DNA of 64,000 bases from positions 82,646,001 to 82,710,000 of the forward strand of contig NC_042997.1 of the NCBI RefSeq assembly GCF_006345805.1, read 5' to 3'. Shown piece by piece: positions 2,869-45,062 of the stretch. Each line of letters begins with the position of its first letter. Positions within the stretch are counted from its first letter, which is position 1. Under the pieces are notes generated by a model. The model was given only the letters and a program-made list of their open reading frames with translations. It was not told where the DNA came from and did no database searches. The position numbers were made by a program, and so were the translations under genes. Origin of the DNA: Octopus sinensis. Lineage: Eukaryota.

Positions 2869-2968
2869 CCAATGCGACAGTTCCCATGAGGAAAGAATTG
2901 CCAATATTGTGGTAGTCGTCAATAACATTCTCTCGGATTTTGAAGCCAATAATGCAAGTTATTATCAC
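2869..2968 (-). CDS. Permease exon H (100 nt, phase 0-1): VIITCIIGFKIRENVIDDYHNIGNSFLMGTVAL(G)
   Basis: ctcttatttctttttccag|GTGATAATA...GCATTGG|gtaggc. Confidence 0.92.
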
Positions 2969-3814
2969 CTGGAAAAAGAAATAAGAGGGTTTTTTTGTGA
3001 AACTGTTTTGAATTTATTTCTTTATGTTTGCATGTTTGGTATCATTTATTTGGTTGAGCAAAATTACTTTTACTGTTTGATATCTTTCCTACTCAAGCAC
3101 AATCAACCACGAAGTAGGAGTACAACGTATATTATTGCTGTTGGGTAAACTGAGTTACGTACCTTGATCAGGCAGACAACAAGCTCAACGGTTGCTGTAA
3201 AACCTGAATGTGATACAACACTTTAACCTCAGCCATAACCTTATGGAAAAGTAATTGTTTTCCAGCAGAATGTTGCTGGGACTATAATCTATAGAGTAAA
3301 ATAAAAAAAAAAAAACGACAGCTAAAAGATTGCAGTTCTTTCAGCCTCATCATGGTCAGAAACATAAGTGACTTTTTTGATGGGAATAAAATGATCAAAT
3401 AGAGCATATTTGACAATAACTGTATGAGAAAGATTGCACAACTCAATACAGAGCTTATGAATGATGTTATTATTTATAACAATATATATTTAATATAGCT
3501 TTCAAATAATTTTGAGATTATTACAATTAAGAGAGGTACAACATATACAGTTGAAAACTGAAGGTTTATGTTTTCAGTATAAGTAGGTCTTGCTCAGTTT
3601 TGATGTAGTCAGAATCATACATTCTCTCTTAGAGAGTTTTATATTGTGAAACTGCATTAAAGCTGAATGAAAGCCTCAACTAATTCTGAGGGTGATATAA
3701 TCTCAGTTTTAAAGTATTTTAGAGTAATATTCTTATATAAGCTTAAAAGCTGCCCTATTGGATGGCTTTTAAGCTAGTATATAGCTTTTAAGCAACCGAC
3801 CCCGAATGGGAAGA

Positions 3815-3892
3815 TCTGCAAACAGATCTCTGACTTGTGGAGATTTTGTTGCAATTGCTTCCTCCAGAGTCATATCCCAATGATGATCATAT
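3815..3892 (-). mobile_element. Possible Helitron Rep/helicase micro-fragment
   Basis: Translates DHHWDMTLEEAIATKSPQVRDLFA, like the Helitron motif HWDxTLxEA...SPxQxRxLFA; flanks do not continue the match. Confidence 0.45.
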
Positions 3893-4240
3893 TCTTCGCA
3901 AAAAATCATGTTAAAAATATTGCCAAAAATAATTGCAGTAATGAAAACACAGGAATCCAAAATTTCAGGAATGCAGGTCTGGATTTGGCTCAGAATGTTT
4001 TTAATTTACTCACAGAGTAAAGTCGAAAAAGTGTGATACACTGACATTCACATTTATTATATTAGATATGTTTAATTCTGGGGAAACTTAATTTCAATTA
4101 AAGTGTATTTTATGTATATGTGTGTGTGTGCGTGTATATATATATATATATTATATATATATATATATATATGGCGGTGCCCCAGCATGGCCACAGCTCA
4201 TTAGCTGAAACTGGAAAAATCAAAATCAAAATCATATATA

Positions 4241-4830
4241 CTTAATAAATAGGGTTCAGCAAAGATTTGCTTTACCACATACCGAAATTTAGAAATAGCA
4301 ACCAAAAAACGTTAGCTATTTCTTCTATTTTAAAAAGCCAAAATACTTGAAAACAATCACACAGGCAGAGAATTTTCTCCCTGATAACAAACTACAGATT
4401 TTTTTCTGTAGTAGCTTACTTGAAGACACATGAGGTCGGGCAGGGGAGGGTAATTGAGCCTCATTCATGTTTTGAATTCGGTGGTGCTAACATTGAATAT
4501 TATCTGTCGGATACCGTTAGGTAGAGAGATATGTTCAATTATTCCAGCACCTTCGAATCCTGGGTTCCTATGCTGAAGAGGAAAACGGTGGGTAAAGTAT
4601 AATTATATATTCTTTATTCCAAACCTAATTCCGAAACGCGCGTCCATAGGTGACCAGATATTGATTGATTTTCGTAACTTTTCCTCTCTGCCTGTGTGAT
4701 TGTTTTCAAGTACTTTGGTTTTTTTGGGAGTCCCTTTTTAAAGTAGAAGAAATAGGTAACGTTTTTTGGCTGCTATTTCTAAATTTCAGTATGTGGTAAA
4801 GCAAATCTTTGCTGAACCCTATTTATTAAG
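4241..4830. mobile_element. MITE with about 130-bp TIRs and TA target duplication
   Basis: ta|CTTAATAAATAGGGTTCAGCAAAGATTTGCTTTACCACATAC... and ...GTATGTGGTAAAGCAAATCTTTGCTGAACCCTATTTATTAAG|ta. Confidence 0.88.
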
Positions 4831-4931
4831 TATTACTTAAGTTTACCATGAAATGGTCCTTTTTTCATGCAGAATTCTGCTTGGTGAAATTATTAATTAA
4901 TTCTTAATTAATTAATTTTACCCTTTGTTAT

Positions 4932-4985
<54 letters not shown>

Positions 4986-5386
4986 ACGTATGTATTAAAG
5001 AAAGTAAAAAAATGTTCAGTATGTTGGCCACAGGAATTTCTGTCAAAGAGACATGGTTAAACAAAGTTGTATATCATCTCCCTCTTTCTCTCTCTCTTAT
5101 TATTACTCCCACTGCCACCATCAACACTACTACTTTTAACAAAACATCATCAACTCTCTCTCTCTCTTTTTCTTTCTCTCTCTGTCTTCGCCACCACCCT
5201 CACCATCTCTATGCCTACTATTACTCTCGTGCCATCATGAGGAATAGTAGAAGTGTCACTGAATAGTGAGACAGGGGAGTCAAAGTGTAACACACAAACA
5301 CACAGAAATTAGTTTTTGCATTGATTATATGATATTATATTAAGGCGGCAAGCTGGCAGAATCATTAGCTACACACACACACACAC

Positions 5387-5541
5387 AATGGGCTTCTTTC
5401 AGTTTCCATCTACTAAATCCACTTACATGGCTTTAGTTAGCCTGAGGCTATAGTAGAAGACATTTGCCCAAGGTTCCACACAGTGAGATTGAACCTGGAA
5501 CTATGTGGTTGGGAAGAAAGCTTCTTATCAAACAGCCACAT
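5387..5541 (-). mobile_element. SINE family A, 5' head only
   Basis: Reverse complement of ggctgtgtggtaagaagcttgcttcccaaccacatggttc...gaaactgaaagaagccc; preceded by 28 bp of a family B 5' end (5343-5370). Confidence 0.8.
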
Positions 5542-5734
5542 CCTGTTAAGGTGATGCAAAAAAAAAAGAGTTAATCAAAGAGGGAGTGATAGAAGAGCCA
5601 GAGTGAGTGAGTGAAGAGAGAAAGAGTATAATTGTAGAAACAGAGTGGTTGGGGAGAAGGTAGTAGAGGGGAATAATGGAAGATAAATAGAGATACCAAC
5701 TGCCTGATTACTGATGAAAGAGCGAAGGAGCAAA

Positions 5735-5771
<37 letters not shown>

Positions 5772-6734
5772 AGAGAAAGTTAGTATTACTCTCTCTAGCC
5801 TAATTTTTTTCCCCAGTCTTTGCAAGTCTGTCTATTAGTTTTTATGGCTTTATATATTGTACTATTTCACCACCATGTCACATGTGAGGCCTTGTACCAG
5901 CCACATATTTGGTCTGTAGTTCTCATCAAGTTGTTCCACCAGAAATTCCTTGTTTTTTCTCTATTTTATAAGCCCCTGCCCTGTCTCTACCTCATTTCCA
6001 TCTATAATATCAACTAGAACTTTTCTGAATCTAAGAGCAGAGCACTTGACTCTTACTTTCAGAGACATTTCTTTCTCCAAATTGTTGTTTGCCTCCAAGT
6101 ATATCTAGCTCTAACTCTGAAGTCACTAACCACTAACCTATGTTAGATAGGACATTTTACAACCATTTTACAACCATCTGCCCATCACATTTTCTGGTGG
6201 AGATAGAGTCTATTTGGGTTTTGTGTTCATCTAATTGGGTGGTTGGCCAGTTTCCTGAAGTTCATATTGGTTAGCTAATTTGCATTACAGAACTTTAGAA
6301 AATCTGATCTTGTATCATATGCATAGCTTCTACATAAATTGGACAAGTGATCATAGTGTTGCTGAATATGTCGATTGAAATTTCCAGCAGGGACATTCAA
6401 CTTCATTCATTATTGAGATAGTTTACAGGAAGTCCAAATAAGAATGGTCCTTGTGCCAGCCCAGTTTGTGGACCATATTTAGAGATAACCAATGACTGGC
6501 CAAAGCTTAATTAGTCTATTTGCACAAAATGTTTGAAGAAAAAGTAATACGAATACAACTGCATGATGTTGAAGAAATGAACATGAAAGATGGAAACCTA
6601 TATTTGCTGGAAGTAGCAGTGAGATCATTTTGATATTGTTCCTTATGTTGTGAAACAAGAGTGGACACACACGCATGCACATGAATAAAATGAAACAATT
6701 GACAAAATAAATAAAGAAATAAAATTATACTCAC

Positions 6735-6858
6735 AGTTAAAGCAAATGCCAAACCCTTCAAGAGGGTGAGAAATGATACAATTGGTTTAATCAAATGGAG
6801 TGCAAATATTATAAATGATGAGAGAACACAGACATAGACAGGCATAATATAAACTTTC
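6735..6858 (-). CDS. Permease exon G (124 nt, phase 2-0): (E)KVYIMPVYVCVLSSFIIFALHLIKPIVSFLTLLKGLAFALT
   Basis: aaatctatttgtag|GAAAGTTTAT...GCTTTAACT|gtgagt; lies inside ORF-track call 6516..6935 (-). Confidence 0.92.
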
Positions 6859-7157
6859 CTACAAATAGATTTAAAATTAAAATCAAAAGAAGAAACGTAT
6901 GTAATTTGTAATATTCTGAAGTATATTTTTGACATAATTTTGATATCATGGTTTCAATATCCTGGCATTTCTAAATGTACTACAATGGTAAGATGTAATT
7001 TACCATAATTTAAAAACCTTAAATGCTGGTGTAGCTAAGTAATTAACATTGTCTTGCAACTACACAGCTCTGGGTTTGATCTCATTGTGTGATACCTTGG
7101 GTAAATGTTTTATACTCAGCATGAGCAATGCTTTGTGGATGGAATTGGATCAAAGAA

Positions 7158-7351
7158 TATTCTTTTATTCTTTTACATGTTTCAGTCATTTGACTATGGC
7201 CATGCAGGAGCACCACCTTTAGTTGAGCAAATCAACCCCAAGACTTATTCTTTGTAAGCCTAGTACTTATTGTATTGGTCTCTTTTGCTGAACTGCTAAG
7301 TTACTGGGATGTAAACACACCAGCATTGGTTGTCAAGTGATGTTAGGGGGA

Positions 7352-7402
<51 letters not shown>

Positions 7403-7562
7403 ACACACACACACACACACATACACCAGGCTACTTTCAGTTTCTGTCTACCAAATCCACTCACAAGGCTTTGGTCGATCCGAGACTATAGTAGAAGACA
7501 CTTGCCCAAGGTGCCATGCAGTGGGACTGAACCTGCAACCATGTGGCTGGTTAGTGAGCTAC
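7158..7562 (-). mobile_element. SINE family A, near full length (head + internal CA/TG microsatellite + tail)
   Basis: Tail 7158-7355, (CA)n 7356-7422, head 7423-7562; CpGs mostly converted to TG/CA. Confidence 0.88.
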
Positions 7563-8032
7563 TCCTGCATCTGAGCAAAAGGCCATTGTATGTATGTATT
7601 TATGGATGTGTGTGTGTATGTGCATGTGTATATATATATATATATACATATATACTCATACATACACACATATAGATATGTATACATAAACGTATACACA
7701 GTAAAATTGGACCAATGTAAGTTGGACCTTTTTTATATGTATCCATTTTACTTCTAAACATATACACACGCATATATACATGCACGTTTTTCACAGTAGA
7801 GCACTCTGTAAGCATCAGCATAATCTCAGGAAAGCAAAACTTTTCTGATTGTAAATCAATATGTTCACTTTGTTCCTCTTGTACATCTCATCAGTTAGAT
7901 GTATCAGTTTGTATATCTACCCTATTATGATAGACTGCTATTTAAAGCAATGCTTCATAGAAATTTAGCCCTTTTATACAAAATGAAGAAGTGAGTAGCT
8001 ACTGATATTTCTAAATATCCTGTAAGGATATA

Positions 8033-8190
8033 CCATGTGACTATGTGGTAAAAAGCTTGCTTTCTAACCACATGGTTCTGGGTTCAGTCCCACTGCATGG
8101 CACTATGAGCAAGTTTCTTCTACTATAGCCCCAGACTGATCAAAGCCTTATGAGTGAATCTGGTAGATGGAAACTGAAAGAAGCTCATTG
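8033..8190 (+). mobile_element. SINE family A head
   Basis: gactatgtggtaaaaagcttgctttctaaccacatggttctgggttcagtccc...ggaaactgaaagaagctc. Confidence 0.8.
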
Positions 8191-8402
8191 TATATATATA
8201 TATATATATATAAAATATATAATTATTTAAATATAACTATAGTAAGAGCACTAATGAGTAGCACCACATGCTAGAAATAGACACCAAATAGCTCTAAGAA
8301 CTACATTATTTACCACACTGGCACGGGCTGAAAATGAGGAAAATGAACAAAAAGGATTTTTCATAAATGGTTTAACCATAGATCAATGACTGAAACAAGT
8401 AA

Positions 8403-10886
8403 AAGAGATACTCTTAGATAAAGATAGTTATAGCCAGTTTATAGGGTTAGCCAGGGTCCATAAAGTGCTTAGCTTTACAACGTCTCATCAGACCCTAATG
8501 ACTGGTGGCCTGTCTCTTCAAAATGGAGGGACAAAAGGCTTTGTAGCTAGTTACTGAATTCACAAAGGAGGAACGGCAAGTGCAATGGATTGTCCCCCTT
8601 AGACTGCTATCCAGAATCCACCCAGTCAGCTTGCGATTTCAGTAGGAATAACCTGAAGTGTAAGCAGGGTCTGAAGACTTCCATCCTCGAATTTGAAATG
8701 TTCCCCAGGTTGAGGGAGTTATTTAATTTCCTTGCCTGTTCCACTATGCACATAAAAAAATTCTGACAGGTCCCTAATCTTCTCAGATAAGACAAAAAGA
8801 AAACTATATAAGATAGACACCCACACTTATAGGCTATTAGAAGACCACATTACAGAGAACTACAGGAGTGCTCCCCTCCACATATACAACAACATCAACA
8901 GTAAAACCAAACAGTTAGCCAACAACTTAGATGTAGCACATATAAGGAGAGCCACCAATCTCTCCCTAGGGTGTAGCACTAACAAAGTGATTACCTGATT
9001 TAATACCAACAAGGAGAGGGGAAGTGCAAAGTTGACCCAATTCGACACCTGTCAAAAGGATTACTGGTCAAGGTACTGTCCTTCACTAGAGGCTTCACTG
9101 ATATTAGCAACAGAGACATAGATGTCATCATGCATGTCAGGTCCTGTTTAATAAAGGTTTGACCTGGGTCAACAAAACTGACCCCGTGGGGTTTTTTGAC
9201 ATAGTAATGCTGGCCTATGACAATGCTGACGTATGAGACCTCATTGGATACCCTAAAGAAGAAATTCCACTCTGTCCTCTTTGGTATCTACTGAGATGAT
9301 GCCCTGGCTATCTCTAGAAGGACTAATGGGCACACCCTAGATAAGCTTAGAAAAGATCTGATTAGCACCCTTAGATCATGGGACTGATAACTACAATTGG
9401 GACCAACCTCACCATTATGAACTTCTTAGACTTGGGCTCTGGTACATACAGGCCGTACTGCAAACCATATGAAAGGCTGGCATATATCGACACAGCTTCC
9501 TGTGTTCAGAAACCTGGTGAAGGGTGTCAGTAAAAGGATCTTAAACCTGTCCTCTAGCCAAAAACTTTTGAACACAGTAGACCCCTACTATAACAAGACC
9601 CTAACTGCTAGCAGGTTTAGGGACTGCATCTCCTACATGCTAGGCCCTAACATCCACAGAAGGAAGCACCAGCGAAATATTATTTGGTTTCCCCCCTCCC
9701 TTCTTCCTCAATGTAAAATCATATGTAGGTAGGATATTCCTTAGGCTAGTAGATAAGCACTTTACACAATCACATAGGTATGGATGCTTATTCAACAGAC
9801 ACAACCTAACAGTCTCTTTTATTTGCACACCCAGTATTAAGAGTATTTTAGTTAACACCCCTAGGCTACAAGTGTAGGCAAAAATACTCATGCAGGAACT
9901 ATAGCAGATGCTCAGTGGGAGGCCAATGCAAAACCATGGGGGTCGTTTATGAGACTGAAGTGGTATCTGACCCTAATGGCAGCAGCAGATTTTCTACCAT
10001 CTACAGCAATAGCAGTGATAATAGCAAGAGCAGCAACTTTAGCAGAAATAGCAGCAGCACCTTTGCTAACGATAAAGCTGATAATGATAATAATATCAAC
10101 AATAACAACCACCACTATAGCAGCATCAATAGAGACATCAAAAATGACAACAACAACAATGCCAACACCAACTCTGCCACTGATGACGTCCCTTATGTTA
10201 GCATTAACAACAACACTAGCACAAACAATAGCAGAAGTAGCAGCATCAACATCAAAAGAAGCAACAACTCCAACAGCAGCAGCAGTAAGACCAACAGCAG
10301 CAGCAGTAAGACCAACAGCAGCATTCAAAATTACATTGGATGTTCTGGAAACACCTTCAAGCAGTGCCTCTACAGCCACGATCATGTAGAGATATTATGC
10401 CACATCCTTGGCCAGCCATGTGTGGTGCCTGAAGGACAAATGGACTGTACATGTAATCATGTGGAAAATCTTAGAAAAATCAGGTTCCTACATCAACAGG
10501 AGCAAGTGTTGCAAGCAATGCATGGTGGAACGGATGAGAATATTAAAGAACTCCCTTGACCCAGAGAACATCTCAAATTCCAGGATGGTAGTCTTCAGAC
10601 CCTGCTTACATTTGAGGCAATGCCTACTGAAATCCTGGGACCTGCAAGCTGAGTAAATCCCAGATAGCAGTCTAAGGGAGACAATCCCTTGCACTTGACC
10701 TTTCTCCTTTGTCTGTGTGCTCAATAACTAGCAATGAGACTTTTTCTCCATTAATTTTGAAGAGAGGTTATAGGCCACCAATCACTAGGGTCTGATGAAA
10801 TATTGTAAAGCTAAGCACTTTATGGGTGTAAAACCCAGGGTAACCCTATGAACTGGCTGTGACTATCTTTCTCTAAATACTCTTCA
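8403..10886 (+). mobile_element. Penelope-like element (RT + GIY-YIG) with inverted 5' copy of its 3' end (pLTR)
   Basis: Broken frames encode QFD, FDIVM..YD..DV, GIY*DDALAIS (GLYRDDG), NFLD, RNIIWF.PP, VVY...YIGCSGNTFKQ and WKILEK...C..C; 8403-8790 is the diverged reverse complement of about 10500-10886. Confidence 0.9.
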
Positions 10887-10934
10887 GTTCTATAACTTAG
10901 AATGTGCTTCTGTTTCAGATTTATGATTTACTGA

Positions 10935-10982
<48 letters not shown>

Positions 10983-10987
<5 letters not shown>

Positions 10988-11185: not shown

Positions 11186-11235
<50 letters not shown>

Positions 11236-11596
11236 TGGAAAATGTGCGAAATCCTAGGGACAGTTAGGTATATTTGAAAAAAAAGAAAACAATGACTTCA
11301 CTGGTAGTTTTAATCAATTTAATGTTTTAATAATATAATTTTACAGTTTGGTTTGTAGATCTAGTCAGAAATCACATTGCATCTGTGCGGCTTGGCTGGC
11401 TAAGTCATTCTTTCCTTTTTCAAATATATAAATATATATATGACGGGCATTTTTCAGTTTCTGTCTACCAAATCCACTCATAAGGCTTTGGTTTGCCTGA
11501 GGCTATAGTAGAAGACACTTGCTCAAGTGCCACGCAGTAGGACTGAACCCGGAACCATGTGGTTGGGAAGGAAACTTCTTACCACACAGCCACATC
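10983..11596 (-). mobile_element. SINE family A interrupted by a MITE
   Basis: Tail 10983-11230 and head 11440-11596, with a foreign insert between them. Confidence 0.8.
11269..11428. mobile_element. Small MITE with about 28-bp TIRs nested in a SINE
   Basis: tatatttgaaaaaaaagaaaacaatgactt versus aagtcattctttcctttttcaaatata. Confidence 0.6.
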
Positions 11597-13854: not shown

Positions 13855-13920
13855 TCTATATGTAGTATTTCAGAGTATGATTCACTACCAGCCAGACAAT
13901 AACCAATCAATACTGAAGAC
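13855..13920 (-). CDS. Permease exon F (66 nt, phase 2-2): (L)SSVLIGYCLAGSESYSEILHI(E)
   Basis: tattgtttgtttgcag|GTCTTCAGT...CATATAGA|gtgagt. Confidence 0.92.
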
Positions 13921-13963: not shown

Positions 13964-14340
13964 TCTTTTATCTTTAATTTGTTTCAGTCTTTAGACTGTG
14001 GCCATGCTGGGACACCACCTTGAAGAATTTTTAATTGAATGAGATGATTCCAATAATTTTTCTGTTTTCTTTAAGCCTGGTACTTATTCTATTGGTCTCT
14101 TTTTGTTGAACTGCTAGTTTACAGAGATGTAAGCACAGCAGCATCAGTTGTCAAGCAGTGATGGAGGACACAGACTCAAAGACACACATACATGAATATT
14201 TATATATGACAGTCTTTTTTCAGTTACTTTCTACCAAATCCATTCACAAGGCTTTGGTTATCCTGAGGCTTCCCAAGGTGCCACACAGTGGAATTGAACC
14301 TGGAACCATGTGGTTGGGAAGCAAGCTTCTTATTTCCTTA
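13964..14340 (-). mobile_element. SINE family A
   Basis: Tail and head motifs; ends about 45 bp upstream of the exon F acceptor. Confidence 0.82.
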
Positions 14341-17966: not shown

Positions 17967-18093
17967 AGCTGCAACACAGCCAGGAAATCAAAAATGTGTC
18001 GTACTCCATTGCAGAGAAACATCTCACTTAACATGTGAAGATTAGGTGGAGTGATGAAGTGGTTGTGCAGGTTATCCTCATCTTCACTAGATT
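17967..18093 (-). CDS. Permease exon E (127 nt, phase 1-2): (E)SSEDEDNLHNHFITPPNLHMLSEMFLCNGVRHIFDFLAVLQ(L)
   Basis: ctcttctcatttcttttctag|AATCTAGTG...TTGCAGCT|gtaagt; open frame. Confidence 0.92.
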
Positions 18094-23504: not shown

Positions 23505-23559
23505 CACTTTCTTCCTTTTTATTCTGAAGTGCATCGTGGAGTTCTTTATCAAGACTTTC
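23505..23559 (-). CDS. Permease exon D (55 nt, phase 0-1): ESLDKELHDALQNKKEES(E)
   Basis: ttgctgtttacag|GAAAGTCTT...GAAAGTG|gtaaat; charged loop whose phase bridges exons C and E. Confidence 0.82.
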
Positions 23560-26192: not shown

Positions 26193-26826
26193 GACAATAT
26201 TCTTTTATTCTTTTACTTGTTTCAGTCATTAGACTGTGGCCATACTGGGGCGCCAGCTTCAAGAATTTTAGTCGAATGACTTGACACCTGGTTTTTCAAA
26301 AAAATTTTTTAAGCCTGGTATTTCTATCAGTCTCTTTTGCTTAACTGCTGAGGGGATGTAAACACACCAGCCCCGGTTGTCAAGCGGTGGTGGGGGCAAA
26401 CACAATACACTCACACATACACACACACATATATATTCTTTAATTTGTTTCAGTCATTTGGCTGTGGCCATGCTGGAGCACCACCTTTAGTTGAACAAAT
26501 CAACCCCAGGATTTATTCCTTGCTAGCCTAGTACTTATTCTATTGGTCTCTTTTGCTGAACCACTAAATCATGGGGATGTAAGCACACCAACATTGGTTT
26601 TCAAGCAATAGTGGGGGAAACAAACACAGACACACAAAACATATACACTCATATATATATATATATGACAGGCTTCTTTCAGTTTCCATCTACCAAATCC
26701 ACTCACAAAGCTTTGGTCGGCCCAAGCCTATAGTAGAAGACACTTGCCCAAGGTGCTCCTCAGTGGGACTGAAACCAGAACCATGTGTTTCATAAGCAAG
26801 TTACTTACCAAACAGCCACTCCTGTG
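26193..26826 (-). mobile_element. Two adjacent SINE family A copies (tail-only 26193-26425; full 26434-26826)
   Basis: Repeated ttgtttcagtcatt...ggccat(a/g)ctgg tail motif, with the head in the second copy. Confidence 0.82.
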
Positions 26827-27030: not shown

Positions 27031-27200
27031 TATACAATGGGCTTCTTTCAGTTTCTGTCTACCAAATTCACTCACAAGGCTTTGGTTGGCCTGAAGCTAT
27101 AGTAGAAGACACTTGTTCAAGGTGCCACCCAGTGAAACTGAACTTAGAACCATGTGGTTGGGAAGCAAGCTTCTTACCACACAGCTATGTCTATGCCTAT
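27031..27200 (-). mobile_element. SINE family A head
   Basis: gggcttctttcagtttctgtctaccaaattcactcacaagg...cttaccacacagc. Confidence 0.8.
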
Positions 27201-27424: not shown

Positions 27425-27493
27425 CTTAAAAGCCAGAAACTGATTAATACAGGCTCTCTGAAGTATTTCCACAGTGATAAAAATTAAAAGAAC
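27425..27493 (-). CDS. Permease exon C (69 nt, phase 0-0): VLLIFITVEILQRACINQFLAFK
   Basis: tatttttctcatcctag|GTTCTTTTA...GCTTTTAAG|gtttga; continues the hydrophobic segment in frame. Confidence 0.88.
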
Positions 27494-34017: not shown

Positions 34018-36348
34018 CACTGGTCAACAAAATTGAATGCATTATACTCTTTATGAATGCAAACCAACTTTTTAGACTAACTTTTCATGCTGATTTAAAA
34101 ATTTCACTCCATTATTATGCAGCACATATCAGTTTTTCAGTAGATACATGCATATATTTACATATTTGTATATATGAAATCATTAACGTAATAAATAAGG
34201 ACATATTATTTTTAGAAAGTAAATGGGTTTATTGAGTTAGAAATCATCACTATCATTCTACAAAAGAGTGAATACACAAAAAACAAAGTTAGAACAACAG
34301 AGTTAGAAACATTATCATTTGGATTTCCTGTGGTGTTCCTGATCTGGTTGATCAGAGCAAAGTGTACAACTGTAGTCAGTGAGCATACTGTCATTCCAGA
34401 AGCCTTGGTACTGTTTCTCCATAGTACTAATGTCCTGGTGAAATCTTTCACTATGTTCATCACACACTGCTCCAAGGTTATCTGCGAAGAAATCCAGATG
34501 GGAGTCCAAGAAGTGAACTTTCAGTGACATGTGACAACTCATTGCTGAGTAACATTTCAGAAGATTCTTGATGCCATCCGTCTACTCCATTGCCTTCTTG
34601 TTGCCCAAGAAATTCTCACAGATCGAATTGAAAGAATTCTAGGCAGGCAGTTCCAGTTCATCCAGTGTTGTCCTGAAGTTGACATCTTTGAGTACTTCTC
34701 TAATTTGGATTCTGACAAAGATACCCTCTTTCAACTTCGCCTGTGTGATTTTGGAAAACTTTTCTACAACATACTCATACACTCTGGCATTTCCCTTCCC
34801 AAGTGTTTTTACAAACTATTTCATCAGTCCAAGCTTTATGTGCAAAGGAGGCAATAGGACATTACATGGATCTACAAGAGATATATTCTTGACGCTAGAT
34901 AGTCCTGGCTAGTATGATGTTCTTATCCGCCAGTTTAATTCCGAATAATATCTGTTAGTTGCCCGACTATCTCATAGACTCAAGGAAAAACAGTATTTTG
35001 TGAAACTTGACTGCATTTCCATTAACATTCCAATGACTTTTAAATCTCCACATATTTTCCATGAGTATCTTTCATAGGTAATGGCATGAAGTAAAAGTTT
35101 CATATTCTCATATGATTCATGAAAATGAATGGAGTGTGCAATAGGAATGGAGGGCTTCAAATTGCCATTATGGAGAAGTACAGCTTTTAAACTTTGTTTT
35201 GAAGAGTCCATAAACAAACACCACTCTGTAGGATCATGATTTTGTGATAAACATCTGAAAAATCCATCAATGTTACTGTAAAAGCAAAGCAGACCTTCAA
35301 AAGAAAAACACATTTGTAGAATTACATTTCTCTGCCGAAAATAAGTTATACAAACACCATGCTCTAGCAGATACTTCTCCTTCAGTTTTGATGCTAACCA
35401 TTCTGCTTTATCTTTTGAGAGGGATAGGTCTCTGACAAAGTCATTCAGTTCAGCTTGGGAAAATTTCTGAGGTTCAAAGCTATTGTCATCAGACATGTAA
35501 TCTTCCTCAGCATCATCATCTGACGTTTCAATACCATCATCTGGTGGAACTGGAATTGGTGAACTTCCATTGTGAGGCACAGGTCTCATTGCAGAATCCA
35601 AATTGGGATACACACTTTTGTGTTTATTCCTCAAAGAAAATCCTATGACATTTATTTTGCAAAAATAACAGTCTTTCGGCTTCCTCCATATCATTGGAAT
35701 GGCAAAGGCATTGACTTCTTCTTACTGAACCAGTCACATAAACCATTTGAGCAAGCTGAGTAGATAAAATGTGGTGCCTATAACTTGTTCTGATCTCCTA
35801 ATGGACAGTCAAAGTATAGCTTATAAATCTTGATCTCTGGTATTATTGTACGTTTTTGAGCTTTCACAATAAATTGTCCCCAGACATAACGAAACACATC
35901 AGGGCGATTTCTACACTGTCTTGACATTGTTAGCACTGTAAAACAAGTAAGGAAATAGATACAAATTGTTATACTTATATTGAATTTGAGATGATGAAAA
36001 ATTTCATCAGACCAATTATGACTGGACAATTTGAGATGTTGAAATACCTATTTCATCAGACAAAACTTGATTGGTTAATTTAAGATGATGACATATTCCA
36101 TCTGACCTATGCAGCAATGAATAATGTAGTTTACTTTAAAGGTATGTTTCCCTGATGTAAATGAAATACATGTATACATATCATTAATTGGAATTTCTAT
36201 ATAATGCATGAGCTAAAACCAAAAACCTTTCTCATCTTGAAAACTGTATGTGATGTCAAAAAACTAATTGTATATTTGAAACCAGCTTTAAAAACTACAC
36301 TAAGTACACCTTGACATATGCTTGATGAAAAATACTTGTTGACCAGTG
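34018..36348 (-). mobile_element. Full-length Chapaev3 (CMC superfamily) DNA transposon, transposase pseudogenised
   Basis: taa|CACTGGTCAACAA ... TTGTTGACCAGTG|taa (3-bp TWA TSD); minus frames give MIWRKPKDCYFC, YPNLDSAMRPVPH, CGDLKVIGML, DEHSERFHQDI and YQGFWN..MLTDY. Confidence 0.88.
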
Positions 36349-37410: not shown

Positions 37411-37660
37411 ATGACAGTAAAATCTCTTTAAGATAACCTCCCAACAACTGCCATTAAAAACAGAATATATACTCTAGACAATATACAGTCAATAATGATT
37501 AAATGACTTCAAATTAAATGCTGACTAAACAGAAAAATTCCATACAATAAACCTGCTCAAACAGAAACAATACTAACAAATATAATTGAAAATGAGTTAA
37601 ATCATACGAAATTAAACAAGTTTACTTTAAGACAAGTACCATTTTATTTTGTTGTTTTGT

Positions 37661-38030: not shown

Positions 38031-39640
38031 TATAATTATTTTCTTTACATAAATTTAATAAATTACATTGACTCTTAAGAGGAAAATATTGTCACATCTC
38101 ACATTTGTTTCTGTTACAGCTGCTTTTAGCAGGTGCCATCTTAGATCAATACTAATAAAATATGATATTGAAGGATTGAGTGTCAGTAAAGTTAAAACAG
38201 TTGTTATTTAGTCCCAGTTCATCATTGATTGAACATAACTATGATATAAGCTTTCCTACCTTATTATATCTAGGACAACATTACTCAAAGTGTCTTTCTT
38301 ATTTTAACAAGTGCTTTGAAAGAAACTGACAACTATTTCTAGGAAGGAAAGTGACCATGTATAAGGTTCCCGATAGGTACATCTATATTAATGCTGGCCT
38401 TTAAGTCTTCAATCACCACTCATTGAGCAGATCTATGATCAAAGACATTCCAACAATGACCGTCCTATTTCTATTCAGATATAGTGTATCTAGAACTAAA
38501 ATGTATTTCTCCTTTTTTAAGAAAAGCATATTATATGAGGGATATTTGGCTCTTTCTACTTGACTGGAAGAATGAACATAATATAGGGGCTCCACTTTTG
38601 GTTCAATTCCAGACATTATAACTGTAATGCAAGAGGTGTACTTCATTAAAAATGAAATGCATGTGAATGCTAAGAAAAATTATAGATTAATAAAATTCAT
38701 AAATAAAAATTCAATCAAATATAAGTTTATATAAGTTTAAGAGGTTTGCTTAGTAAACATATAGTCAAAGACCCAACCCTACTCCTTGACATTTTGATTA
38801 ATCCTTAAACAGCAGGACAGAGTTGCATGAATGCGTGTGCCAAACAAGCAAGAAACAAAAAATACCTCTTTTTCTTAAGAATAATTTTTATACACATTTA
38901 CACTTCAAATAAAATTTTCAATTTCATTACACTGTGTAAGGACAAAAAAAAAACATGATTTTTGTCCTTGAGTAGCAACTGTTATTTCCTATTTGCTAAC
39001 CTGTAGAAAGTATGAAAAATAGTTAATATTTCCTTCAAACTACTTTTGTTAAACTTATTTAAACCTCAAGTAATCCCTCTCAACACATAGCTATGATGTT
39101 CCCCCACTAGTCCTGCTCATCATCACTAAGGGACATGCTCAAATGGTTAAGGTCAAGCAACTAAAAAGCAAACTTGTGATATTGAACAGAATATTTGCTC
39201 AACTCAGCACTGAATATGTTTGAAATGTAATGGAAAATAGGTCAGTTTCAAAACATTGATTTCCAGGTCACAAAAGCAAAGCTTGAAGGGAATAGTAGTC
39301 ATTATGTTTCATTTCTAGATTGAAGCAAATAGGAAATAATACTTACTGACCAAACACCAAAAAGAAAAAAAGAAATAAAGAAATAAAAATTGTTACACAG
39401 TGTTATTTAAAAGTGCTATAAAATATTCACTTTTTGTTGCATCCAAGTGAGCATAAATTTACTTGTTGTCAAATGAATTTACAAACTGAGAAAAATCAGT
39501 GGACTTTCTCCATCCAGAGCTGGTTGAAGCATCACTTTCTCCTGTGCTATCTAGAACATCATCATCAACAACCTCATATGATGATAAAGGAAAGTTAGAA
39601 AAAAGACAAAAAACTTCTTTATTGCAATATAAATCTTTTA

Positions 39641-40898
39641 TTGGGTAATCCCATAAATATTGCCATTTTTTCAATTGCATGAACTAAAAGTCAGAGGGGG
39701 ATGGGATAAACCACCTGCAGATAGTAATTTTACCTTGTCATTATTCATTATTCTAAGTGCAAGTTTTGAAGAATGCAGTTTGAATTTAACAGATATTTTT
39801 TCAAAGCTATAATGGAAGTGATAAAGGGGCATATTCAGCATATTTTGCTTTATGAGTTCAATAAAGGCAACACTGCAATGGAAAGTGCAAGGAATGTTAA
39901 TGTAGTATATGGGGATCAGACAATATGTGTAAGCCAGTGTTAACAGTGGTCCCAGAAATTCCAAGCTGGAAACTACAGCCTAGAAGATGAGGCTCATCCT
40001 GGAAGATCTGTAGATCTTGACAAGGATGTCCTGCAAGCCCTGGAGGAACAAAATACCATTGTAACTGTTGAGGAACTAGCAGAGAAGCTTGGATTTGGTC
40101 ATTCAACCATTCATCAACACCTGCATGTCATCAGTAAATTGGGTCAATGGGTTCTTCACAAACATTCCCAGTCTAATTGTACGCAAAGAGTGAATGTGTG
40201 CTCTTCTTTACTGTCACATCTCATGAATGAACCTTTTTTGGACTACATATTGACTGGCGACGAGAAATGGGTTCTCTATAAAAATGTCAAGAGCGGAGAC
40301 AGTGAGTAGGGAAAGGAGAAACACTGGCACTCTAGGCTAAAAGGTCTTCACCTACGTAAGGTGTTGTTAGCTGTTTGGTGGGATATGAAAGGTTTAGTCC
40401 ACTTTGAACTTTTAAACCCAAAACAAACAATAACAAAGGAGATATACTGTGAGCAGCTTGAGTTGCTTAAGTCAGCGCTAGAAGAAAAACAACTATCTTT
40501 GGTTTTAAAATGAAAGGTGTTCTTCCATCAAGATAATGCTTGGCCACATACAGTGAGGATGACATTTCAAAGGCTGGAGCAGTTTGAATGGGAAACAATG
40601 TCCCATCCACCATATTCGCTGGATATTGCCCCATCTGATTATCATTTATTCCACAGCCTTCAAAATCATTTCGATGAAAAAAATATAAATTCTGTAGACA
40701 AGGTCAGAACAGGAGGATTATTTTTCGCCACGGACAAGTGAATTTTGGAAGAAGGAGCCTTGCAAGTCTACTAGATAGATGGAAGAGCATTGTAGAAAAT
40801 AACGGAGAGTATATTTTAGATTAAAAAAAGAACTCTGTTTATCTTAATTTTGAAAACAAAAGAAGTATAAAAACTGCATTATTTATGGGATGACCCAA
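39641..40898 (+). mobile_element. Full-length mariner (DD34D) element with disrupted transposase
   Basis: ta|TTGGGTAATCCCATAAATATTGC ... GCATTATTTATGGGATGACCCAA|ta; ATG at 39812; motifs WVLH (WVPH), TGDEKW, FHQDNAWPH and HPPYSLDIAPSDYHLF; internal stops. Confidence 0.95.
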
Positions 40899-41189
40899 TA
40901 TATGTGACTTAATTTCTGTCGTTGATAAGGTCCACTTGTGCTTAGGTGCATTTGGCAAAATAGATGCTTGGACATCAGTTGATGATGGTTATATCCAATG
41001 CAAAAATTTTGGAACATCAATTGGTGATGTCTGTTGTTATCTGAGTTAAGTAAGTGTCTTGTACCAAAGCCTCAAGTCAACCAAAATTTCCTGAGTGAAA
41101 TTTGATAGTAGGAAACTGAACAGTAGTCTTTTAGGTACATCTCAGTGTATCAGTCAGAGATATCAGAATCTCAGTGGAAATACATGTAT

Positions 41190-41443
41190 TTGTTATCTTT
41201 TATTTGTTTCAGTCATTGGACTGCGGACATGCTGGGGAACCACCTTCTAGGGTTTAGTCAAACAAATTGATCTTAGCATTTACTTTTAAGTCTGGTAATT
41301 ATTATATTGATCACTCTTGCTGAACTGCTAAGTTATGAGGAAGTAAACAAACCAGTACCAATTGTCAAGACAGTGTTTAGGGACAAATACAAAGACACAC
41401 ATAAATGTATATATATACATACATATATGTGTGTATGTGTGTG

Positions 41444-41479
<36 letters not shown>

Positions 41480-41503
41480 AATATATATGTGCATGTGTGT
41501 ATG

Positions 41504-41554
<51 letters not shown>

Positions 41555-41718
41555 ATGCACACACACACATACGATAACCTTCCACACAATTTCCATCTGC
41601 CAACGCACTTGTTGGCCCAGGGATATAGTAGCAGCTGCTTGCCAAAGGTGCCATGCAGTGGGATTGAACCTGAAACCATGTGGTTGTAAAGCAAACTTCT
41701 TACCACACAGCCATGCCT
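41190..41718 (-). mobile_element. SINE family A with long internal microsatellite
   Basis: Tail 41190-41400, (CA)/(TG)/(TA) tracts, head to about 41718. Confidence 0.8.
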
Positions 41719-41885
41719 GTGGAATTTCATTATCTTTCTTTTTGCAAAATAGATTAATGAAATAATTACCAAACAAAGTTCAGAGATCAATAGGATCAAT
41801 TAAAACCTTTAAAATGAAAATGGCTGCCAGTCTGACCATCATTAATGTCTTAAATAAAAAAGGATAAATAAAATAAATATCTTAC

Positions 41886-41959
41886 TTGAAAGAAAAACGT
41901 CGTCAGAAACGATATCAAGAAAGGGTAAAATCCTGATTTGTACAAAGTCACAGGCAATC
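41886..41959 (-). CDS. Permease exon B (74 nt, phase 1-0): (G)LPVTLYKSGFYPFLISFLTTFFFQ
   Basis: atctttgaattag|GATTGCCTGTG...TTCTTTCAA|gtaaga; completes the ILG-LP motif. Confidence 0.92.
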
Positions 41960-42399
41960 CTAATTCAAAGATAATATACCAATAAGTGATTAGCAATTTA
42001 AAAGATTAATGATAAAGAATCAGGATATTTACATCAAGAATAATGATTTTAATTGCAGTAGTTTCTAAATCAATAGACACACATACATATTCTCTCTCTC
42101 TCTCTCTTTCTCACATATATTTCATTGTAATCATCATCATTTTAATGTCTACTTTTTCATGCTTGCATGAGTCAGATGAGATTTTGTTGAGGTAGAATTT
42201 CTTTGGACAGATGTTCTGCTTGTTGCCAATCTTTGTCTGTTACCAAGCAAAGTAGGGATTTTTCCCCCATAATCTATCAAATAATGAAATATCCAAACAT
42301 GCTTTCATAGAGATTGCAATCAAATAACACTGTTTGTACGAAGACTGACTCTTTGATTACAACCTACATGCTCATATCAAGACAAGAAGAATAAGCACA

Positions 42400-42410
42400 C
42401 ACGCACACAC

Positions 42411-42451
<41 letters not shown>

Positions 42452-42610
42452 AGACTTCTTACAGTTCCCATCAACCAAATTTCACTTAAAAGGAATTGGT
42501 CAACTTGCAGCTATAGGAGAGGACACCAGCAGCAGAATCCATGCAATGGGACTGAACTCAAAACCATGGAGCTCTGAAATGAACTTCTTTACTACACAGC
42601 CATACCAGCA
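42400..42610 (-). mobile_element. SINE family A head with (CA)n
   Basis: ...gggactgaactcaaaaccatgg...ctttactacacagccat. Confidence 0.65.
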
Positions 42611-42879
42611 CCTACAAATGACAGTGAACTTATTTTCATGCCTGGTGATTTTTAACACATGTTGGGCTGCAACACAGAAGGTTCCAAGGTGTATATTGAG
42701 GTTATGGCTTTGATCCTATGAATGAGGAGGTTTTGTGATGCAAATGACCTGGTCTACAACTTTAACTTCAAGAAATCAGTCAGTCTCCTGATCACCAATC
42801 AATCTGCTGGGCACACAAGAAAGACTGACTACACTCTCTCCAGAAAATGGGGCAGACATGTGCTCATGAATGCTAAGTC

Positions 42880-44400
42880 TTTTCCAGGTGGGGAAAATGG
42901 TTAATGGTTAGTAACTTCAAATTCAGAGATGCCTTGATATTGGTTCATCTGGGATCTTGGAAACTAAGAGGTCAAGTTGTTTCTTGAAAACATCTACTCT
43001 CACTCAATGGAAATCCCTCATATGTTTTAGCAAGGAGTTAAATAGCTGTGGGTCCTTGAATCCTAAGCTATTGCAGTACATGGTCCTCACCCTAGATGAG
43101 ACAGCTGGGACTTTTGGAACAATGCAGTGACGTCCATCTCAAGGTTTGGTATAACTTTCTATTCTAAAATTTGGTGCCGACCCCTCCTGTATCATCCATA
43201 CATATATCACTGCATACCTCTCCTGTATTCACTCCAGAGAGTAGAGTTGTAGCTCTTTCAGTCTCTCCCAGTTGCTCAGCTGTTCCATTGATGCAATCTT
43301 CCTCAAGTTCTGCTATTAATCCTACAGTGTAGGGTGACCATAGTTGAGAGCAGTAGTCCAGACGTCTGAGGACAAATGTCCTCCCTAGGACCAGCATAGT
43401 TTCCTGGTCCCTTGATCTGAAGGTTTTCAGAATCCATCTGGCCACTTGCCTGTACACTGCCACCATCTTGGTGATATGCATGTGAAACAAGTCTTTGTTG
43501 CTCATATTAAACCCCAAATCATGCACTGTATGTGATTCTTGGATTTCTGCTCCTTTTGGTCCAAAGTATCGTGGTTGTGACTTTTGAGCACCAACTAGCT
43601 GGTAGCAGAGGGCTTGGAATCTGCCTGCATTAAATTGCATGTTGTCCTCAACCCATTTATCTATGGCATCTAGGTCTTTCTGTAGAAGATTAGTATCAGA
43701 ATGTTCCTTGATTGTTTGTACTACTTTTGTGTTGTCGACATAGCTAGTAAGAATGGCTATCTGTGTAACTGATGGTATGTCCGAAAGCTCCATCATGAAC
43801 AGTAGTGACCCAATACAGTTCCCTGAGGCACTCCACTTTCTATTAATGTTTCCATGGAGAGAGCTCCATTGGCTGCTACAGCTTGGCTTCTGTCGTTTAA
43901 GAAGTCATGCAACCACTCTCCAATTTTCCCACTTATGCCAAGTCCCCATAATTTGTGACATATCATCCCATGATCAACCTTATCAAAGGCCTTTGCAAAG
44001 TCAAGATATATCACATCTACATTTGAGCAATTCATTAATTGTTTCAACACCCAGTCATAGTATTGCAAAAGCTGTGTAAGGCAGCTTCTGCCTGAGTGAA
44101 AGCTATGGTGGGTATCAAGGAACACAGTTGGTATCTTCCTGACAATGCACTCCATGACCTTGCTGACATGGGAAGTTAGAGAGACAAGTCTATAATTCTT
44201 AGTGTCTGCTCTGTTACCTCCCTTATGGATGGGGCATATAATGCCTTCCTTTAACTTTTTGGGAAGTCTCTCTGTTGTGAGGAAACTCTGAAAGAGAACC
44301 TGAAGTGGTTTAACTAGAGCCCCTTTGCATTTCTTTAGGAGGCTATACAGGTACCAGGGGAGTGCAACAGGTTCCCTCTAGATTAGCATCTACAGTTACA
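42880..44400 (-). mobile_element. CR1-type LINE RT remnant
   Basis: ORFs 43793..44155 (DVIYLDFAKAFDKVDH, SGVPQGTVLG) and 43164..43796 (YVDNTK, LQKDLD, LDYCSQLWSP); NYRLVSLTS upstream. Confidence 0.93.
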
Positions 44401-45020
44401 TTCTTTATAAGAAAGACTCCATAAGATATGTATAGAAAAATTACATTTGTTTTCATGAAAAGCATATGGTAGAATTACAATTCCACATCACAGAAAATAT
44501 GCAAAAATACTTATTTCTTCTCTCTTTCTCTTGCTCTTTCTTATTGTATGTGCATGTGTATGCTTATTTTGTGTGTGAACATAAAGTGATACACTCACAG
44601 AAAATACATTAATTCTGAGTTTCCTGCCTAATTAAGTAATTGAGCAATCATTGACAAATAACATTGGCTGATAATGCTGAAATGTTTGAATGAACAAAAC
44701 TTCCAATGGTAGGTGCATGTTTAATATTTCATAAGGTGGTAGTGGTGGTGGTGGGCACATCTGTCACACTTAAATATGAATTGAATACATTTTATGTTTG
44801 GACAAATTAAAAAATGTATGGATAATAAAATACAAAGTTAAAGTATCTTTGAGGAAGGGTGTATCAGTTGTCACATCAAATTGTAATGAAAATATAATTA
44901 ATGACCATATTAACAATAACAACAACAGCAACAACAACAATAATAATAGTAAATAAAAAAATGAGAAAATTTTCAGAATTTGAAGAAGTTCAAAAACGTT
45001 AAAAAAATGTTTTTACTTAC

Positions 45021-45062
45021 CAAGAATTCCTGTTCCAAGAATACATGCTATTGTTACGAAAT
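45021..45062 (-). CDS. Permease exon A (42 nt, phase 1-1): xFVTIACILGTGIL(G)
   Basis: Minus strand ttattatttttcattcacttcgacag|ATTTCGTAACAATAGCATGTATTCTTGGAACAGGAATTCTTG|gtaagt. Confidence 0.9.

What the first reader, a model, noticed from the sequence alone, without database searches (positions are those of the whole stretch)
2869..45062. Hidden 42-kb, 8-exon gene for an uncharacterised amino-acid permease
Only exon G is visible in frame in the ORF track as part of a minus-strand call. Walking the splice sites by hand gave eight exons (42, 74, 69, 55, 127, 66, 124 and 100 nt; introns 3.1, 14.4, 3.9, 5.4, 4.0, 7.0 and 3.8 kb). All seven junction phases match and the spliced frame has no stops (seen). 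The TM1 motif ILGTGILGLP places it in the LeuT-fold AAAP/HAAAP permeases (established). An acidic loop of about 50 residues follows TM2. It does not look like a named SLC36/38/32 member that I recognise, so it may belong to a poorly characterised animal subfamily (inference).
Basis: partly seen in the sequence, partly recalled or inferred. Interest (0 to 1): 0.8.

Follow-up and report, generated by a model that had tools for sequence, protein, structure and literature searches.

The report
Octopus HAAAP-like permease gene, N-terminal part
The eight hand-spliced exons are real, but they are the front part of a 106-kb octopus gene that public annotation already predicts: an uncharacterised 11-helix transporter distantly related to bacterial tyrosine/tryptophan permeases, so the finding is correct and largely ordinary.

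Summary
All eight minus-strand exons exist at the stated sizes, with AG/GT boundaries and an open spliced frame.

They are not a whole gene. A ninth exon carrying the start codon lies at 63258-63234. With it, the spliced product is letter-for-letter residues 1-227 of Octopus sinensis XP_036358325.1 (LOC115215027, "uncharacterized protein", 503 aa). That gene's coding span is 106 kb. The last 276 residues are encoded beyond the left edge of the window.

The gene is therefore hidden only from a bacterial-style ORF list, not from RefSeq.

The protein belongs to a conserved but unstudied eukaryotic family, found from sponges to fishes and in some protists. No tetrapod, insect or nematode appeared among the listed hits.

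A confident AlphaFold model shows an 11-helix LeuT/APC fold. Sequence links to Pfam Trp_Tyr_perm (HAAAP) are weak for the octopus protein itself (17 bits against a cut-off of 22). The link becomes near full-length through protist members (hhalign 94.6% against E. coli TyrP/Mtr/TnaB/SdaC/TdcC). It is not an SLC32/36/38 member.

The octopus copy evolves fast: dN/dS is about 1.2 against O. bimaculoides, yet frame and splice sites are kept.

Amino-acid transport is inferred, not shown.

The parts
63234..63258 (-). Donor GT at 63233-63232. The 5' end of the exon (UTR) is not determined.
   Evidence: tblastn finds MSIIYLQI exactly. Sequence read. 25/25 nt identical in O. bimaculoides. The product starts XP_036358325.1.
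45021..45062 (-). TM1 with the ILGTGILG motif.
   Evidence: 42/42 nt identical in O. bimaculoides.
41886..41959 (-). End of TM1, first outer loop, start of TM2.
   Evidence: (E 3e-10).
27425..27493 (-). Rest of TM2.
   Evidence: (E 6e-6).
23505..23559 (-). Helical extension of TM2 and start of the acidic stretch.
   Evidence: (E 5e-5). A competing candidate at 23906-23852 has no homology support.
17967..18093 (-). Acidic low-confidence stretch, the conserved PNLH motif, first half of TM3.
   Evidence: (E 2e-20).
13855..13920 (-). Second half of TM3 with the Y.LAGSE motif.
   Evidence: (E 6e-7). Two other same-length candidates lack homology support.
6735..6858 (-). TM4 and start of TM5. Lies within the 139-aa ORF 6516-6935.
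   Evidence: (E 1e-17).
2869..2968 (-). End of TM5 and TM6a, stopping exactly at the TM6 break (GTVAL|GG). The gene continues beyond window position 1.
   Evidence: (E 5e-14).

Best explanation
Window 63258-2869 (minus strand) holds the first nine coding exons, codons 1-227 of 503, of Octopus sinensis LOC115215027. This is an annotated but unstudied gene. Its product is an 11-helix membrane transporter of the LeuT/APC fold.

The window part encodes:
- TM1, with the glycine-rich ILGTGILGLP segment;
- TM2;
- a 47-residue acidic stretch between TM2 and TM3, cytoplasmic if the topology is the usual LeuT-fold one (inferred);
- TM3 to TM5;
- TM6a, up to the Gly-Gly break.

TM1, TM3 and TM6 are three of the four helices that form the substrate site in this fold; TM8 lies outside the window (established knowledge of LeuT-fold carriers).

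The family is a eukaryotic branch distantly related to the bacterial hydroxy/aromatic amino-acid permeases (HAAAP: TyrP, Mtr, TnaB, SdaC, TdcC, all annotated H+ symporters). By inference, the protein most likely works as an alternating-access carrier of an amino acid or similar small solute, probably ion-coupled.

The gene, its splicing pattern, its family and its predicted fold are shown. Substrate, coupling ion and membrane location are inferred or unknown.

The octopus copy is unusually divergent and has evolved with little constraint on amino-acid replacement since the two Octopus species split, while keeping frame and splice sites.
For: Gene and exons:
- Exact exon and intron sizes, AG/GT at all junctions, open frame.
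- Each exon recovered by tblastn with the O. bimaculoides protein.
- Same exon lengths and AG/GT flanks in O. bimaculoides.
- Spliced peptide equals residues 1-227 of XP_036358325.1. All four RefSeq isoforms share this part.
- Coding span 106,044 nt, with RPL27 and DHX29 downstream.

Family:
- 573 clusters at E<=1e-3 and 185 at E<=1e-30. Full-length members are 500-630 aa.
- Members occur in molluscs, nemerteans, annelids, amphioxus, a hemichordate, echinoderms, a sea anemone, sharks, rays, teleosts and Polypterus; in coelacanth; and in a sponge, a diplonemid and a red alga.

Fold:
- AlphaFold2 model has pLDDT 86.6 and pTM 0.87, with 11 long helices and TM6 broken at G228-G229.
- Foldseek best matches are LAT1, GkApcT, AdiC, LysP and BasC at E 2e-7 to 1e-6, probability 1.0, TM-score 0.56-0.68.

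Link to HAAAP:
- Trp_Tyr_perm matches 22 of 50 family members.
- It matches near full length and above cut-off in protist members.
- hhalign of protist members against five E. coli HAAAP proteins gives 94.6%, E 7e-8, 347 columns.
- hhalign of the animal set against the protist set gives 100%, E 2.5e-98.
Against: - No RNA evidence could be examined here for the octopus junctions. RefSeq XP_ models are themselves predictions.
- The octopus protein fails Pfam's own threshold for Trp_Tyr_perm (17.1 against 22 bits) and has no Aa_trans hit.
- Direct hhalign against E. coli HAAAP aligns only 33 columns, at 13% probability.
- No PDB chain is related by sequence.
- The best structural matches are 12-helix APC/SLC7 carriers, and Nramp and NKCC1 also match. 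The fold therefore does not fix the substrate class.
- dN/dS is about 1.2 (95% CI 0.5-3.2), and 26 of 141 family-conserved columns are altered in octopus, including TM6b N232Y and TM8 H363D. Transport function may be relaxed or changed in this lineage.
Confidence: 0.85

Rival explanations
1. The octopus copy is a gene under relaxed constraint, drifting toward loss of function. It is still transcribed and open, but no longer selected as a transporter.
For: - Against O. bimaculoides there are 29 replacement and 7 silent changes in 227 codons. dN/dS is 1.17, and omega<=0.3 is rejected at P=3e-4.
- The exon substitution rate (5.3%) is not significantly below the intron rate (6.2%, P=0.18).
- Octopus deviates at 26 of 141 conserved family columns, against a family median of 3.
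- The O. bimaculoides models include forms that read through a donor site or skip an exon with a frameshift.
Against: - There are no indels in 682 coding nt, where 4.6 gap openings are expected from the intron rate (P=0.01).
- All AG/GT dinucleotides flanking the nine exons are kept in both species.
- There is no stop in 503 codons in O. sinensis.
- The 27 replacements, read off the two peptides printed, look mostly conservative by eye (for example V/I, L/F, A/V, E/D).
- Only 36 substitutions were counted, so the confidence interval is wide.
- Decapod cephalopods are also divergent (18-19 deviations), which suggests long-term fast evolution rather than recent decay.
Confidence: 0.2
2. The family is a LeuT-fold carrier for something other than amino acids (an ion, metal, amine or other metabolite), or acts as a sensor (transceptor) rather than a transporter.
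For: - Sequence similarity to amino-acid permease profiles is confined to TM1-TM2 in animals.
- Structural matches include Nramp metal transporters and NKCC1/NCC cation-chloride carriers at similar scores.
- No member has been assayed. No paper mentions the zebrafish or octopus gene names.
Against: - The only sequence families that match at all are amino-acid permeases: Trp_Tyr_perm, Aa_trans and TIGR00837 araaP.
- Protist members align near full length with characterised E. coli amino-acid:H+ symporters.
- The top structural matches are all amino-acid carriers.
Confidence: 0.25
3. The exon chain is a chance product of hand-picking open AG..GT segments in AT-rich DNA.
For: Open, splice-compatible segments of the right length are common. 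Alternative candidates existed at five of the seven steps.
Against: Each exon is found independently by homology. The chain reproduces a RefSeq protein exactly. Relatives exist across animal phyla at E down to 1e-147 and below.
Confidence: 0.01

Closest known systems
Octopus sinensis LOC115215027 (XP_036358325.1 isoform X2; X1 is XP_029640020.1), RefSeq 'uncharacterized protein'
   Same: Residues 1-227 are identical to the product spliced from the window. It is the same gene.
   Different: Nothing differs in the shared part. The RefSeq model adds 276 C-terminal residues encoded outside the window, and alternative 3' ends.
Octopus bimaculoides LOC106871076 (XP_014772835.1; UniProt A0A0L8HF03, 'Amino acid transporter transmembrane domain-containing protein')
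   Same: It is the orthologue: 88% amino-acid identity, with the same nine exons, lengths and splice sites.
   Different: The public model stops at 231-269 aa by reading through a donor site. The C-terminal exons sit in the next annotated 'gene' 4 kb downstream.
Unnamed metazoan family typified by zebrafish-type 'si:ch211-51h4.2' and many LOC entries
   Same: Full-length homology at 37-49% identity, with shared motifs YLQ.YF.TIA.ILGTGILGLPVT, PNLH, Y.LAGSE, FLMGTVALGG..N.MP and CWAVL.IVPQ.
   Different: The octopus protein has a very short N-terminus and departs from 26 of 141 conserved columns.
Bacterial HAAAP family (TC 2.A.42, Pfam Trp_Tyr_perm PF03222): E. coli TyrP, Mtr, TnaB, SdaC, TdcC
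   Same: A glycine-rich TM1 motif followed by LP, and an 11-helix architecture. Protist relatives of the octopus family align near full length.
   Different: The octopus and other animal proteins match only over TM1-TM2 and below threshold. TM6 reads GTVALGG instead of SFGFHG. They carry a long acidic TM2-TM3 insert and a long TM7-TM8 loop.
Plant AAT_Rhg1 (soybean Glyma.18g022400), a eukaryotic Trp_Tyr_perm protein with eleven TM domains, predicted to be tonoplast-localised (PMC12378334)
   Same: It is a eukaryotic, 11-TM relative of the Trp/Tyr permease family whose transport activity is also unresolved.
   Different: No direct comparison was made here, so the relationship to the animal family is untested.
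AAAP family (TC 2.A.18, Pfam Aa_trans PF01490: SLC32, SLC36, SLC38, TMEM104)
   Same: The same superfamily fold and a similar TM1 motif. Six of 50 family members give weak Aa_trans hits.
   Different: The octopus protein has no Aa_trans hit. No SLC32/36/38 protein appears among the hits.

Membership tests
LeuT-fold / APC superfamily transporters | Core of ten helices in two inverted five-helix repeats, structurally superposable on solved members | tested here: met
   The AF2 model has pLDDT 86.6 and pTM 0.87. Foldseek against the PDB gives 128 matches at E<=1e-3. The best are LAT1, GkApcT, AdiC, LysP and BasC, at probability 1.0 and TM-score 0.56-0.68.
LeuT-fold / APC superfamily transporters | Unwound segments in the middle of TM1 and TM6 | tested here: inconclusive
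   TM6 is broken at G228-G229 in the model (H213-228 / H230-238). TM1 (H3-27) is drawn as one helix by DSSP despite its G18-T-G20 motif.
HAAAP (TC 2.A.42; Pfam Trp_Tyr_perm PF03222) | Score at or above Pfam's gathering cut-off (22 bits) | tested here: not met
   The full octopus protein scores 17.1 bits over residues 10-61 only. The 218-aa window peptide scores 22.0, exactly at the cut-off. Of 50 family members, 22 match at E<=0.01.
HAAAP (TC 2.A.42; Pfam Trp_Tyr_perm PF03222) | Full-length homology to characterised members (TyrP, Mtr, TnaB, SdaC, TdcC) | tested here: inconclusive
   The animal profile against the E. coli profile aligns 33 columns at 13% probability. The protist members against E. 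coli give 94.6%, E 7e-8, 347 columns. The protist and animal profiles match at 100%, E 2.5e-98. Homology is therefore supported only through intermediates.
HAAAP (TC 2.A.42; Pfam Trp_Tyr_perm PF03222) | Eleven transmembrane helices | tested here: met
   The model has eleven long helices: 3-27, 34-84, 117-150, 154-171, 173-205, 213-238, 245-276, 333-378, 385-412, 416-444 and 460-490.
HAAAP (TC 2.A.42; Pfam Trp_Tyr_perm PF03222) | Proton-coupled uptake of aromatic or hydroxy amino acids | not testable with these tools
   This needs transport assays. No paper on any family member was found.
AAAP (TC 2.A.18; Pfam Aa_trans PF01490; SLC32/36/38) | Score at or above Pfam's gathering cut-off (25.6 bits) | tested here: not met
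   The octopus protein has no Aa_trans hit. The Aa_trans scores listed for single family members were 16.7 and 22.3 bits, both below the cut-off. Six of 50 members match at E<=0.01, best E 4.9e-6; their bit scores were not listed.
AAAP (TC 2.A.18; Pfam Aa_trans PF01490; SLC32/36/38) | Orthology or close similarity to a named SLC32, SLC36 or SLC38 protein | tested here: not met
   None of the 24 hits or the 120 listed hits carries an SLC name. No solved SLC38A9 or other chain is found by sequence.
Unnamed metazoan 'si:ch211-51h4.2-like' family | Full-length similarity and shared motifs with family members | tested here: met
   E ranges from 1e-96 to 1e-147 and below across phyla, with 90-100% coverage. 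There are 45 invariant columns over 50 sequences.

The most novel reading that the evidence does not exclude
The gene represents an ancient eukaryotic transporter family, a sister group of the bacterial HAAAP permeases. It is kept from sponges to fishes and in several protist lineages. It was not seen in tetrapods, insects or nematodes, and no member has ever been assayed. Pfam does not capture it. In octopuses it has shifted to near-neutral or adaptive protein evolution, with changes at substrate-site helices (TM6b N232Y, TM8 H363D), which would point to a changed or lost function in that lineage.
Probability: 0.35. Interest if true: 0.45.

Novelty: already known. Interest (0 to 1): 0.22.

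Why it matters
It also shows that such a gene is usually already in RefSeq.

The wider biological interest is modest. A well-conserved 11-helix carrier family of aquatic animals and protists has no name of its own, no adequate Pfam model and no experimental data. It appears to have been lost in land vertebrates. A first transport assay on a consensus-like member, for example zebrafish si:ch211-51h4.2, would characterise an orphan transporter family.

The fast evolution of the octopus copy and the split gene model in O. bimaculoides are small, checkable annotation and evolution points.

Tried and rejected
- Looked for the next exon (GGT..VMPFLYKD...) and for the O. bimaculoides alternative tails in window 1-2868. 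Nothing was found. The X2 tail turned out to be the second exon after H (IRKYLL...) read in another frame, plus read-through of its donor.
- PDB sequence searches with the N-terminal profile and the full-length profile gave no relatives.
- NCBIfam gave only a 20-bit TM1 hit to araaP, whose cut-off is 350.
- Direct hhalign of the animal family against E. coli HAAAP aligned TM1 only. The link had to be made through protist members.
It was rerun without that row.
- The exact-product look-up failed for the shorter isoforms. It worked for the longest ones, but the O. sinensis locus was too long for its DNA to be returned.
- Literature searches for ch211-51h4.2, LOC115215027 and LOC106871076 found no paper.
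- Rfam and tRNA scans of the window were empty.
- Pfam on the large intronic ORFs gave only one RVT_1 hit.
- My first homology search did not list the identical O. sinensis protein. It surfaced only.

Full report
**What is in the sequence**

The window is AT-rich (36% G+C) animal DNA, full of microsatellites and dispersed repeats. The ILGTG motif occurs once, on the minus strand at 45042-45028.

|---|---|---|
| A | 45062-45021 | 42 |
| B | 41959-41886 | 74 |
| C | 27493-27425 | 69 |
| D | 23559-23505 | 55 |
| E | 18093-17967 | 127 |
| F | 13920-13855 | 66 |
| G | 6858-6735 | 124 |
| H | 2968-2869 | 100 |

- The introns are 3061, 14392, 3865, 5411, 4046, 6996 and 3766 nt.
- Each exon follows a pyrimidine-rich tract and AG, and precedes GT.
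- The 657-nt splice is open in one frame.
- Exon G lies inside the 139-aa ORF 6516-6935.

The description is therefore accurate.

**Is it more than chance?**

Frame-compatible AG..GT segments are common here. At five of the seven steps, 2-3 candidates of exactly the right length kept the frame open. Homology decides it:
- The O. bimaculoides protein LOC106871076 is 88% identical over the whole peptide.
- tblastn finds every exon separately, with E from 2e-20 to 1e-3.
- All exons have the same length and AG/GT flanks in the O. bimaculoides locus L001.

**Extent of the gene**

- tblastn also found MSIIYLQI at 63258. The sequence there reads ATG TCG ATA ATT TAC CTA CAA ATC T|gtaagt. This gives a first coding exon at 63258-63234 and an 18,171-nt first intron.
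- With this exon the product is 227 aa, identical to residues 1-227 of XP_036358325.1, 'uncharacterized protein LOC115215027 isoform X2 [Octopus sinensis]', 503 aa. Isoforms X1, X3 and X4 share this part.
- The coding span in assembly GCA_006345805.1 is 106,044 nt, followed by RPL27 and DHX29. The window therefore holds about 60 kb of the gene and 45% of the codons.
- The next exon is not in 1-2868. In O. bimaculoides it lies 8.1 kb beyond the exon H equivalent.

The gene is hidden only from a prokaryote-style ORF list.

**The family**

A profile search of 1.84 billion representative proteins found 573 clusters at E<=1e-3 and 185 at E<=1e-30. Full-length members are 500-630 aa.

Named hits are all 'uncharacterized', 'hypothetical', 'si:ch211-51h4.2' or the automatic UniProt name 'Amino acid transporter transmembrane domain-containing protein'. 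They come from:
- cephalopods, bivalves, gastropods, a chiton, nemerteans and annelids;
- amphioxus, a hemichordate, echinoderms and a sea anemone;
- sharks, rays, teleosts and Polypterus, and coelacanth;
- a sponge, a diplonemid, another protist and the red alga Galdieria, among the more distant members.

No tetrapod, insect or nematode appears among the 24 and 120 listed hits. This is suggestive of loss, but it is not an exhaustive test. No paper mentions the gene names.

**Classification**

Pfam:
- It sees only TM1-TM2.
- Against Trp_Tyr_perm, the window peptide scores 22.0 bits, exactly the cut-off.
- The full octopus protein scores 17.1 bits, below the cut-off.
- Of 50 family members, 22 match Trp_Tyr_perm and 6 match Aa_trans at E<=0.01.

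Other sequence evidence:
- No PDB chain matches by sequence.
- Distant protist members match Trp_Tyr_perm over profile positions 62-375 at 29-30 bits.

I fetched the five characterised E. coli K-12 HAAAP symporters, aligned them and ran hhalign:

| Comparison | Result |
|---|---|
| Animal set against E. coli set | 33 columns, 13% probability |
| Protist set against E. coli set | 347 columns, 94.6%, E 7e-8 |
| Animal set against protist set | 472 columns, 100%, E 2.5e-98 |

The family is therefore a remote relative of HAAAP, demonstrable only through intermediates. It is not an SLC32/36/38 member.

**Fold**

AlphaFold2 with a 50-sequence alignment gave pLDDT 86.6 and pTM 0.87.
- The model has eleven long helices.
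- TM6 is broken at G228-G229, exactly at the end of exon H.
- The acidic stretch (about residues 85-106) and the TM7-TM8 loop (about 280-310) have low confidence.
- Residues 60-84 are modelled as a helical continuation of TM2. It has 11 acidic and 5 basic residues in 47.

Foldseek against the PDB returned APC-superfamily carriers:
- LAT1, GkApcT, AdiC, LysP and BasC were the best matches (E 2e-7 to 1e-6, TM-score 0.56-0.68).
- Nramp and NKCC1/NCC followed.

The LeuT fold is supported, but the fold alone does not identify the substrate.

**Likely mechanism**

By analogy with LeuT-fold carriers (established knowledge), TM1, TM3, TM6 and TM8 form the substrate site and the protein works by alternating access. 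The only sequence relatives with known function are amino-acid:H+ symporters. I therefore infer an amino-acid or similar small-solute carrier, probably ion-coupled. This step is inference.

**An unexpected point**

Between O. sinensis and O. bimaculoides, the 227 codons differ at 36 nucleotides.
- 29 are replacement changes and 7 are silent (Nei-Gojobori dN 0.057, dS 0.048, ratio 1.17).
- The 95% interval is 0.5-3.2, and a ratio of 0.3 or less is rejected at P=3e-4.
- Exon divergence (5.3%) is close to intron divergence (6.2%).

Other signals point to retained constraint.
- The exons carry no indel, where 4.6 gap openings would be expected at the intron rate (P=0.01).
- All splice dinucleotides are kept.
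- The replacements look mostly conservative by eye when the two peptides printed are compared.

The octopus protein departs from 26 of 141 highly conserved family columns. The family median is 3, and decapod cephalopods have 18-19. The changes include N232Y next to the TM6 break and H363D in TM8.

My reading is a fast-evolving orthologue whose frame is maintained. Relaxed constraint or a functional shift cannot be separated with 36 substitutions.

**Side result on annotation**

The O. bimaculoides models (231-269 aa) end by reading through the donor TTG|gtaagataa at L001 84796. One of them reads the same exon in another frame after skipping an exon.

Exons homologous to the C-terminal half (L001 88964-89008 and 90807-90947) lie inside the next annotated 188-aa 'gene' on the same strand. 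That annotation probably splits one gene in two.

**Verdict**

It is wrong on extent (nine coding exons here, of a 106-kb gene that runs off the window) and on being unannotated.

Novelty for the gene is nil. The family remains an orphan, which gives it modest interest.

Noticed in passing
L001 (O. bimaculoides CM046601.1) 84728-84804, 88964-89008, 90807-90947: The public O. bimaculoides model LOC106871076 ends by reading through a donor site (TTG|gtaagataa). Exons matching the C-terminal half of the transporter lie in the next annotated 188-aa gene 4 kb downstream on the same strand. One gene is probably annotated as two.
   Followed up: partly
window exons 63258-2869 (minus) against L001: dN/dS is about 1.17 (95% CI 0.5-3.2) between the two Octopus species. 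Exon divergence is 5.3% against 6.2% in introns, yet there are no indels and all splice sites are kept. The octopus protein alters 26 of 141 family-conserved columns, including N232Y and H363D.
   Followed up: partly
window 43164-44155 (minus), in the intron between exons at 45021 and 41959: Two adjacent ORFs (120 and 210 aa) are a reverse-transcriptase fragment (Pfam RVT_1, E 1.7e-8). The region aligns with O. bimaculoides, so the insertion predates the species split.
   Followed up: partly
window 55605-58999, in the first intron: About 3.4 kb here has no counterpart in the O. bimaculoides alignment, where the gap is about 1 kb. It carries plus-strand ORFs 57270-58497 with a YIDD-type motif but no Pfam hit. 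The adjacent 58-60 kb bin is the most G+C-rich in the window (0.47). It is probably a lineage-specific retroelement insertion.
   Followed up: partly
window 5385-5541, 7158-7563, 8037-8211, 11424-11596, 13964-14332, 26198-26825, 27031-27193, 41186-41429, 56113-56521, 60888-61150: A dispersed SINE-like repeat is present in about ten copies on both strands. Its translation gives the recurring ...LPKVPCSGTEP.TMWLVS... seen in several listed ORFs. One copy ends 44 nt upstream of the acceptor of the exon at 13920.
   Followed up: partly
window 34972-35694 (minus): This is the longest intronic ORF (240 aa, starting MIWRKPKDCYFC...). It has no Pfam hit. It lies in a block that aligns at 91.7% with O. 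bimaculoides, which is no better than the surrounding intron. It is possibly a transposon remnant.
   Followed up: no
window 9912-10559, both strands: Overlapping low-complexity ORFs (N/S/T-rich on plus, A/V/I-rich on minus) of 146-214 aa have no Pfam hit. They look like simple-sequence artefacts, not genes.
   Followed up: partly
family alignment (A1, A3): boundaries GTVAL|GG and NILW|CW: Several truncated fish, shark and coelacanth gene models end exactly where octopus exons end (after GTVAL and after NILW). This suggests intron positions shared between molluscs and vertebrates.
   Followed up: no
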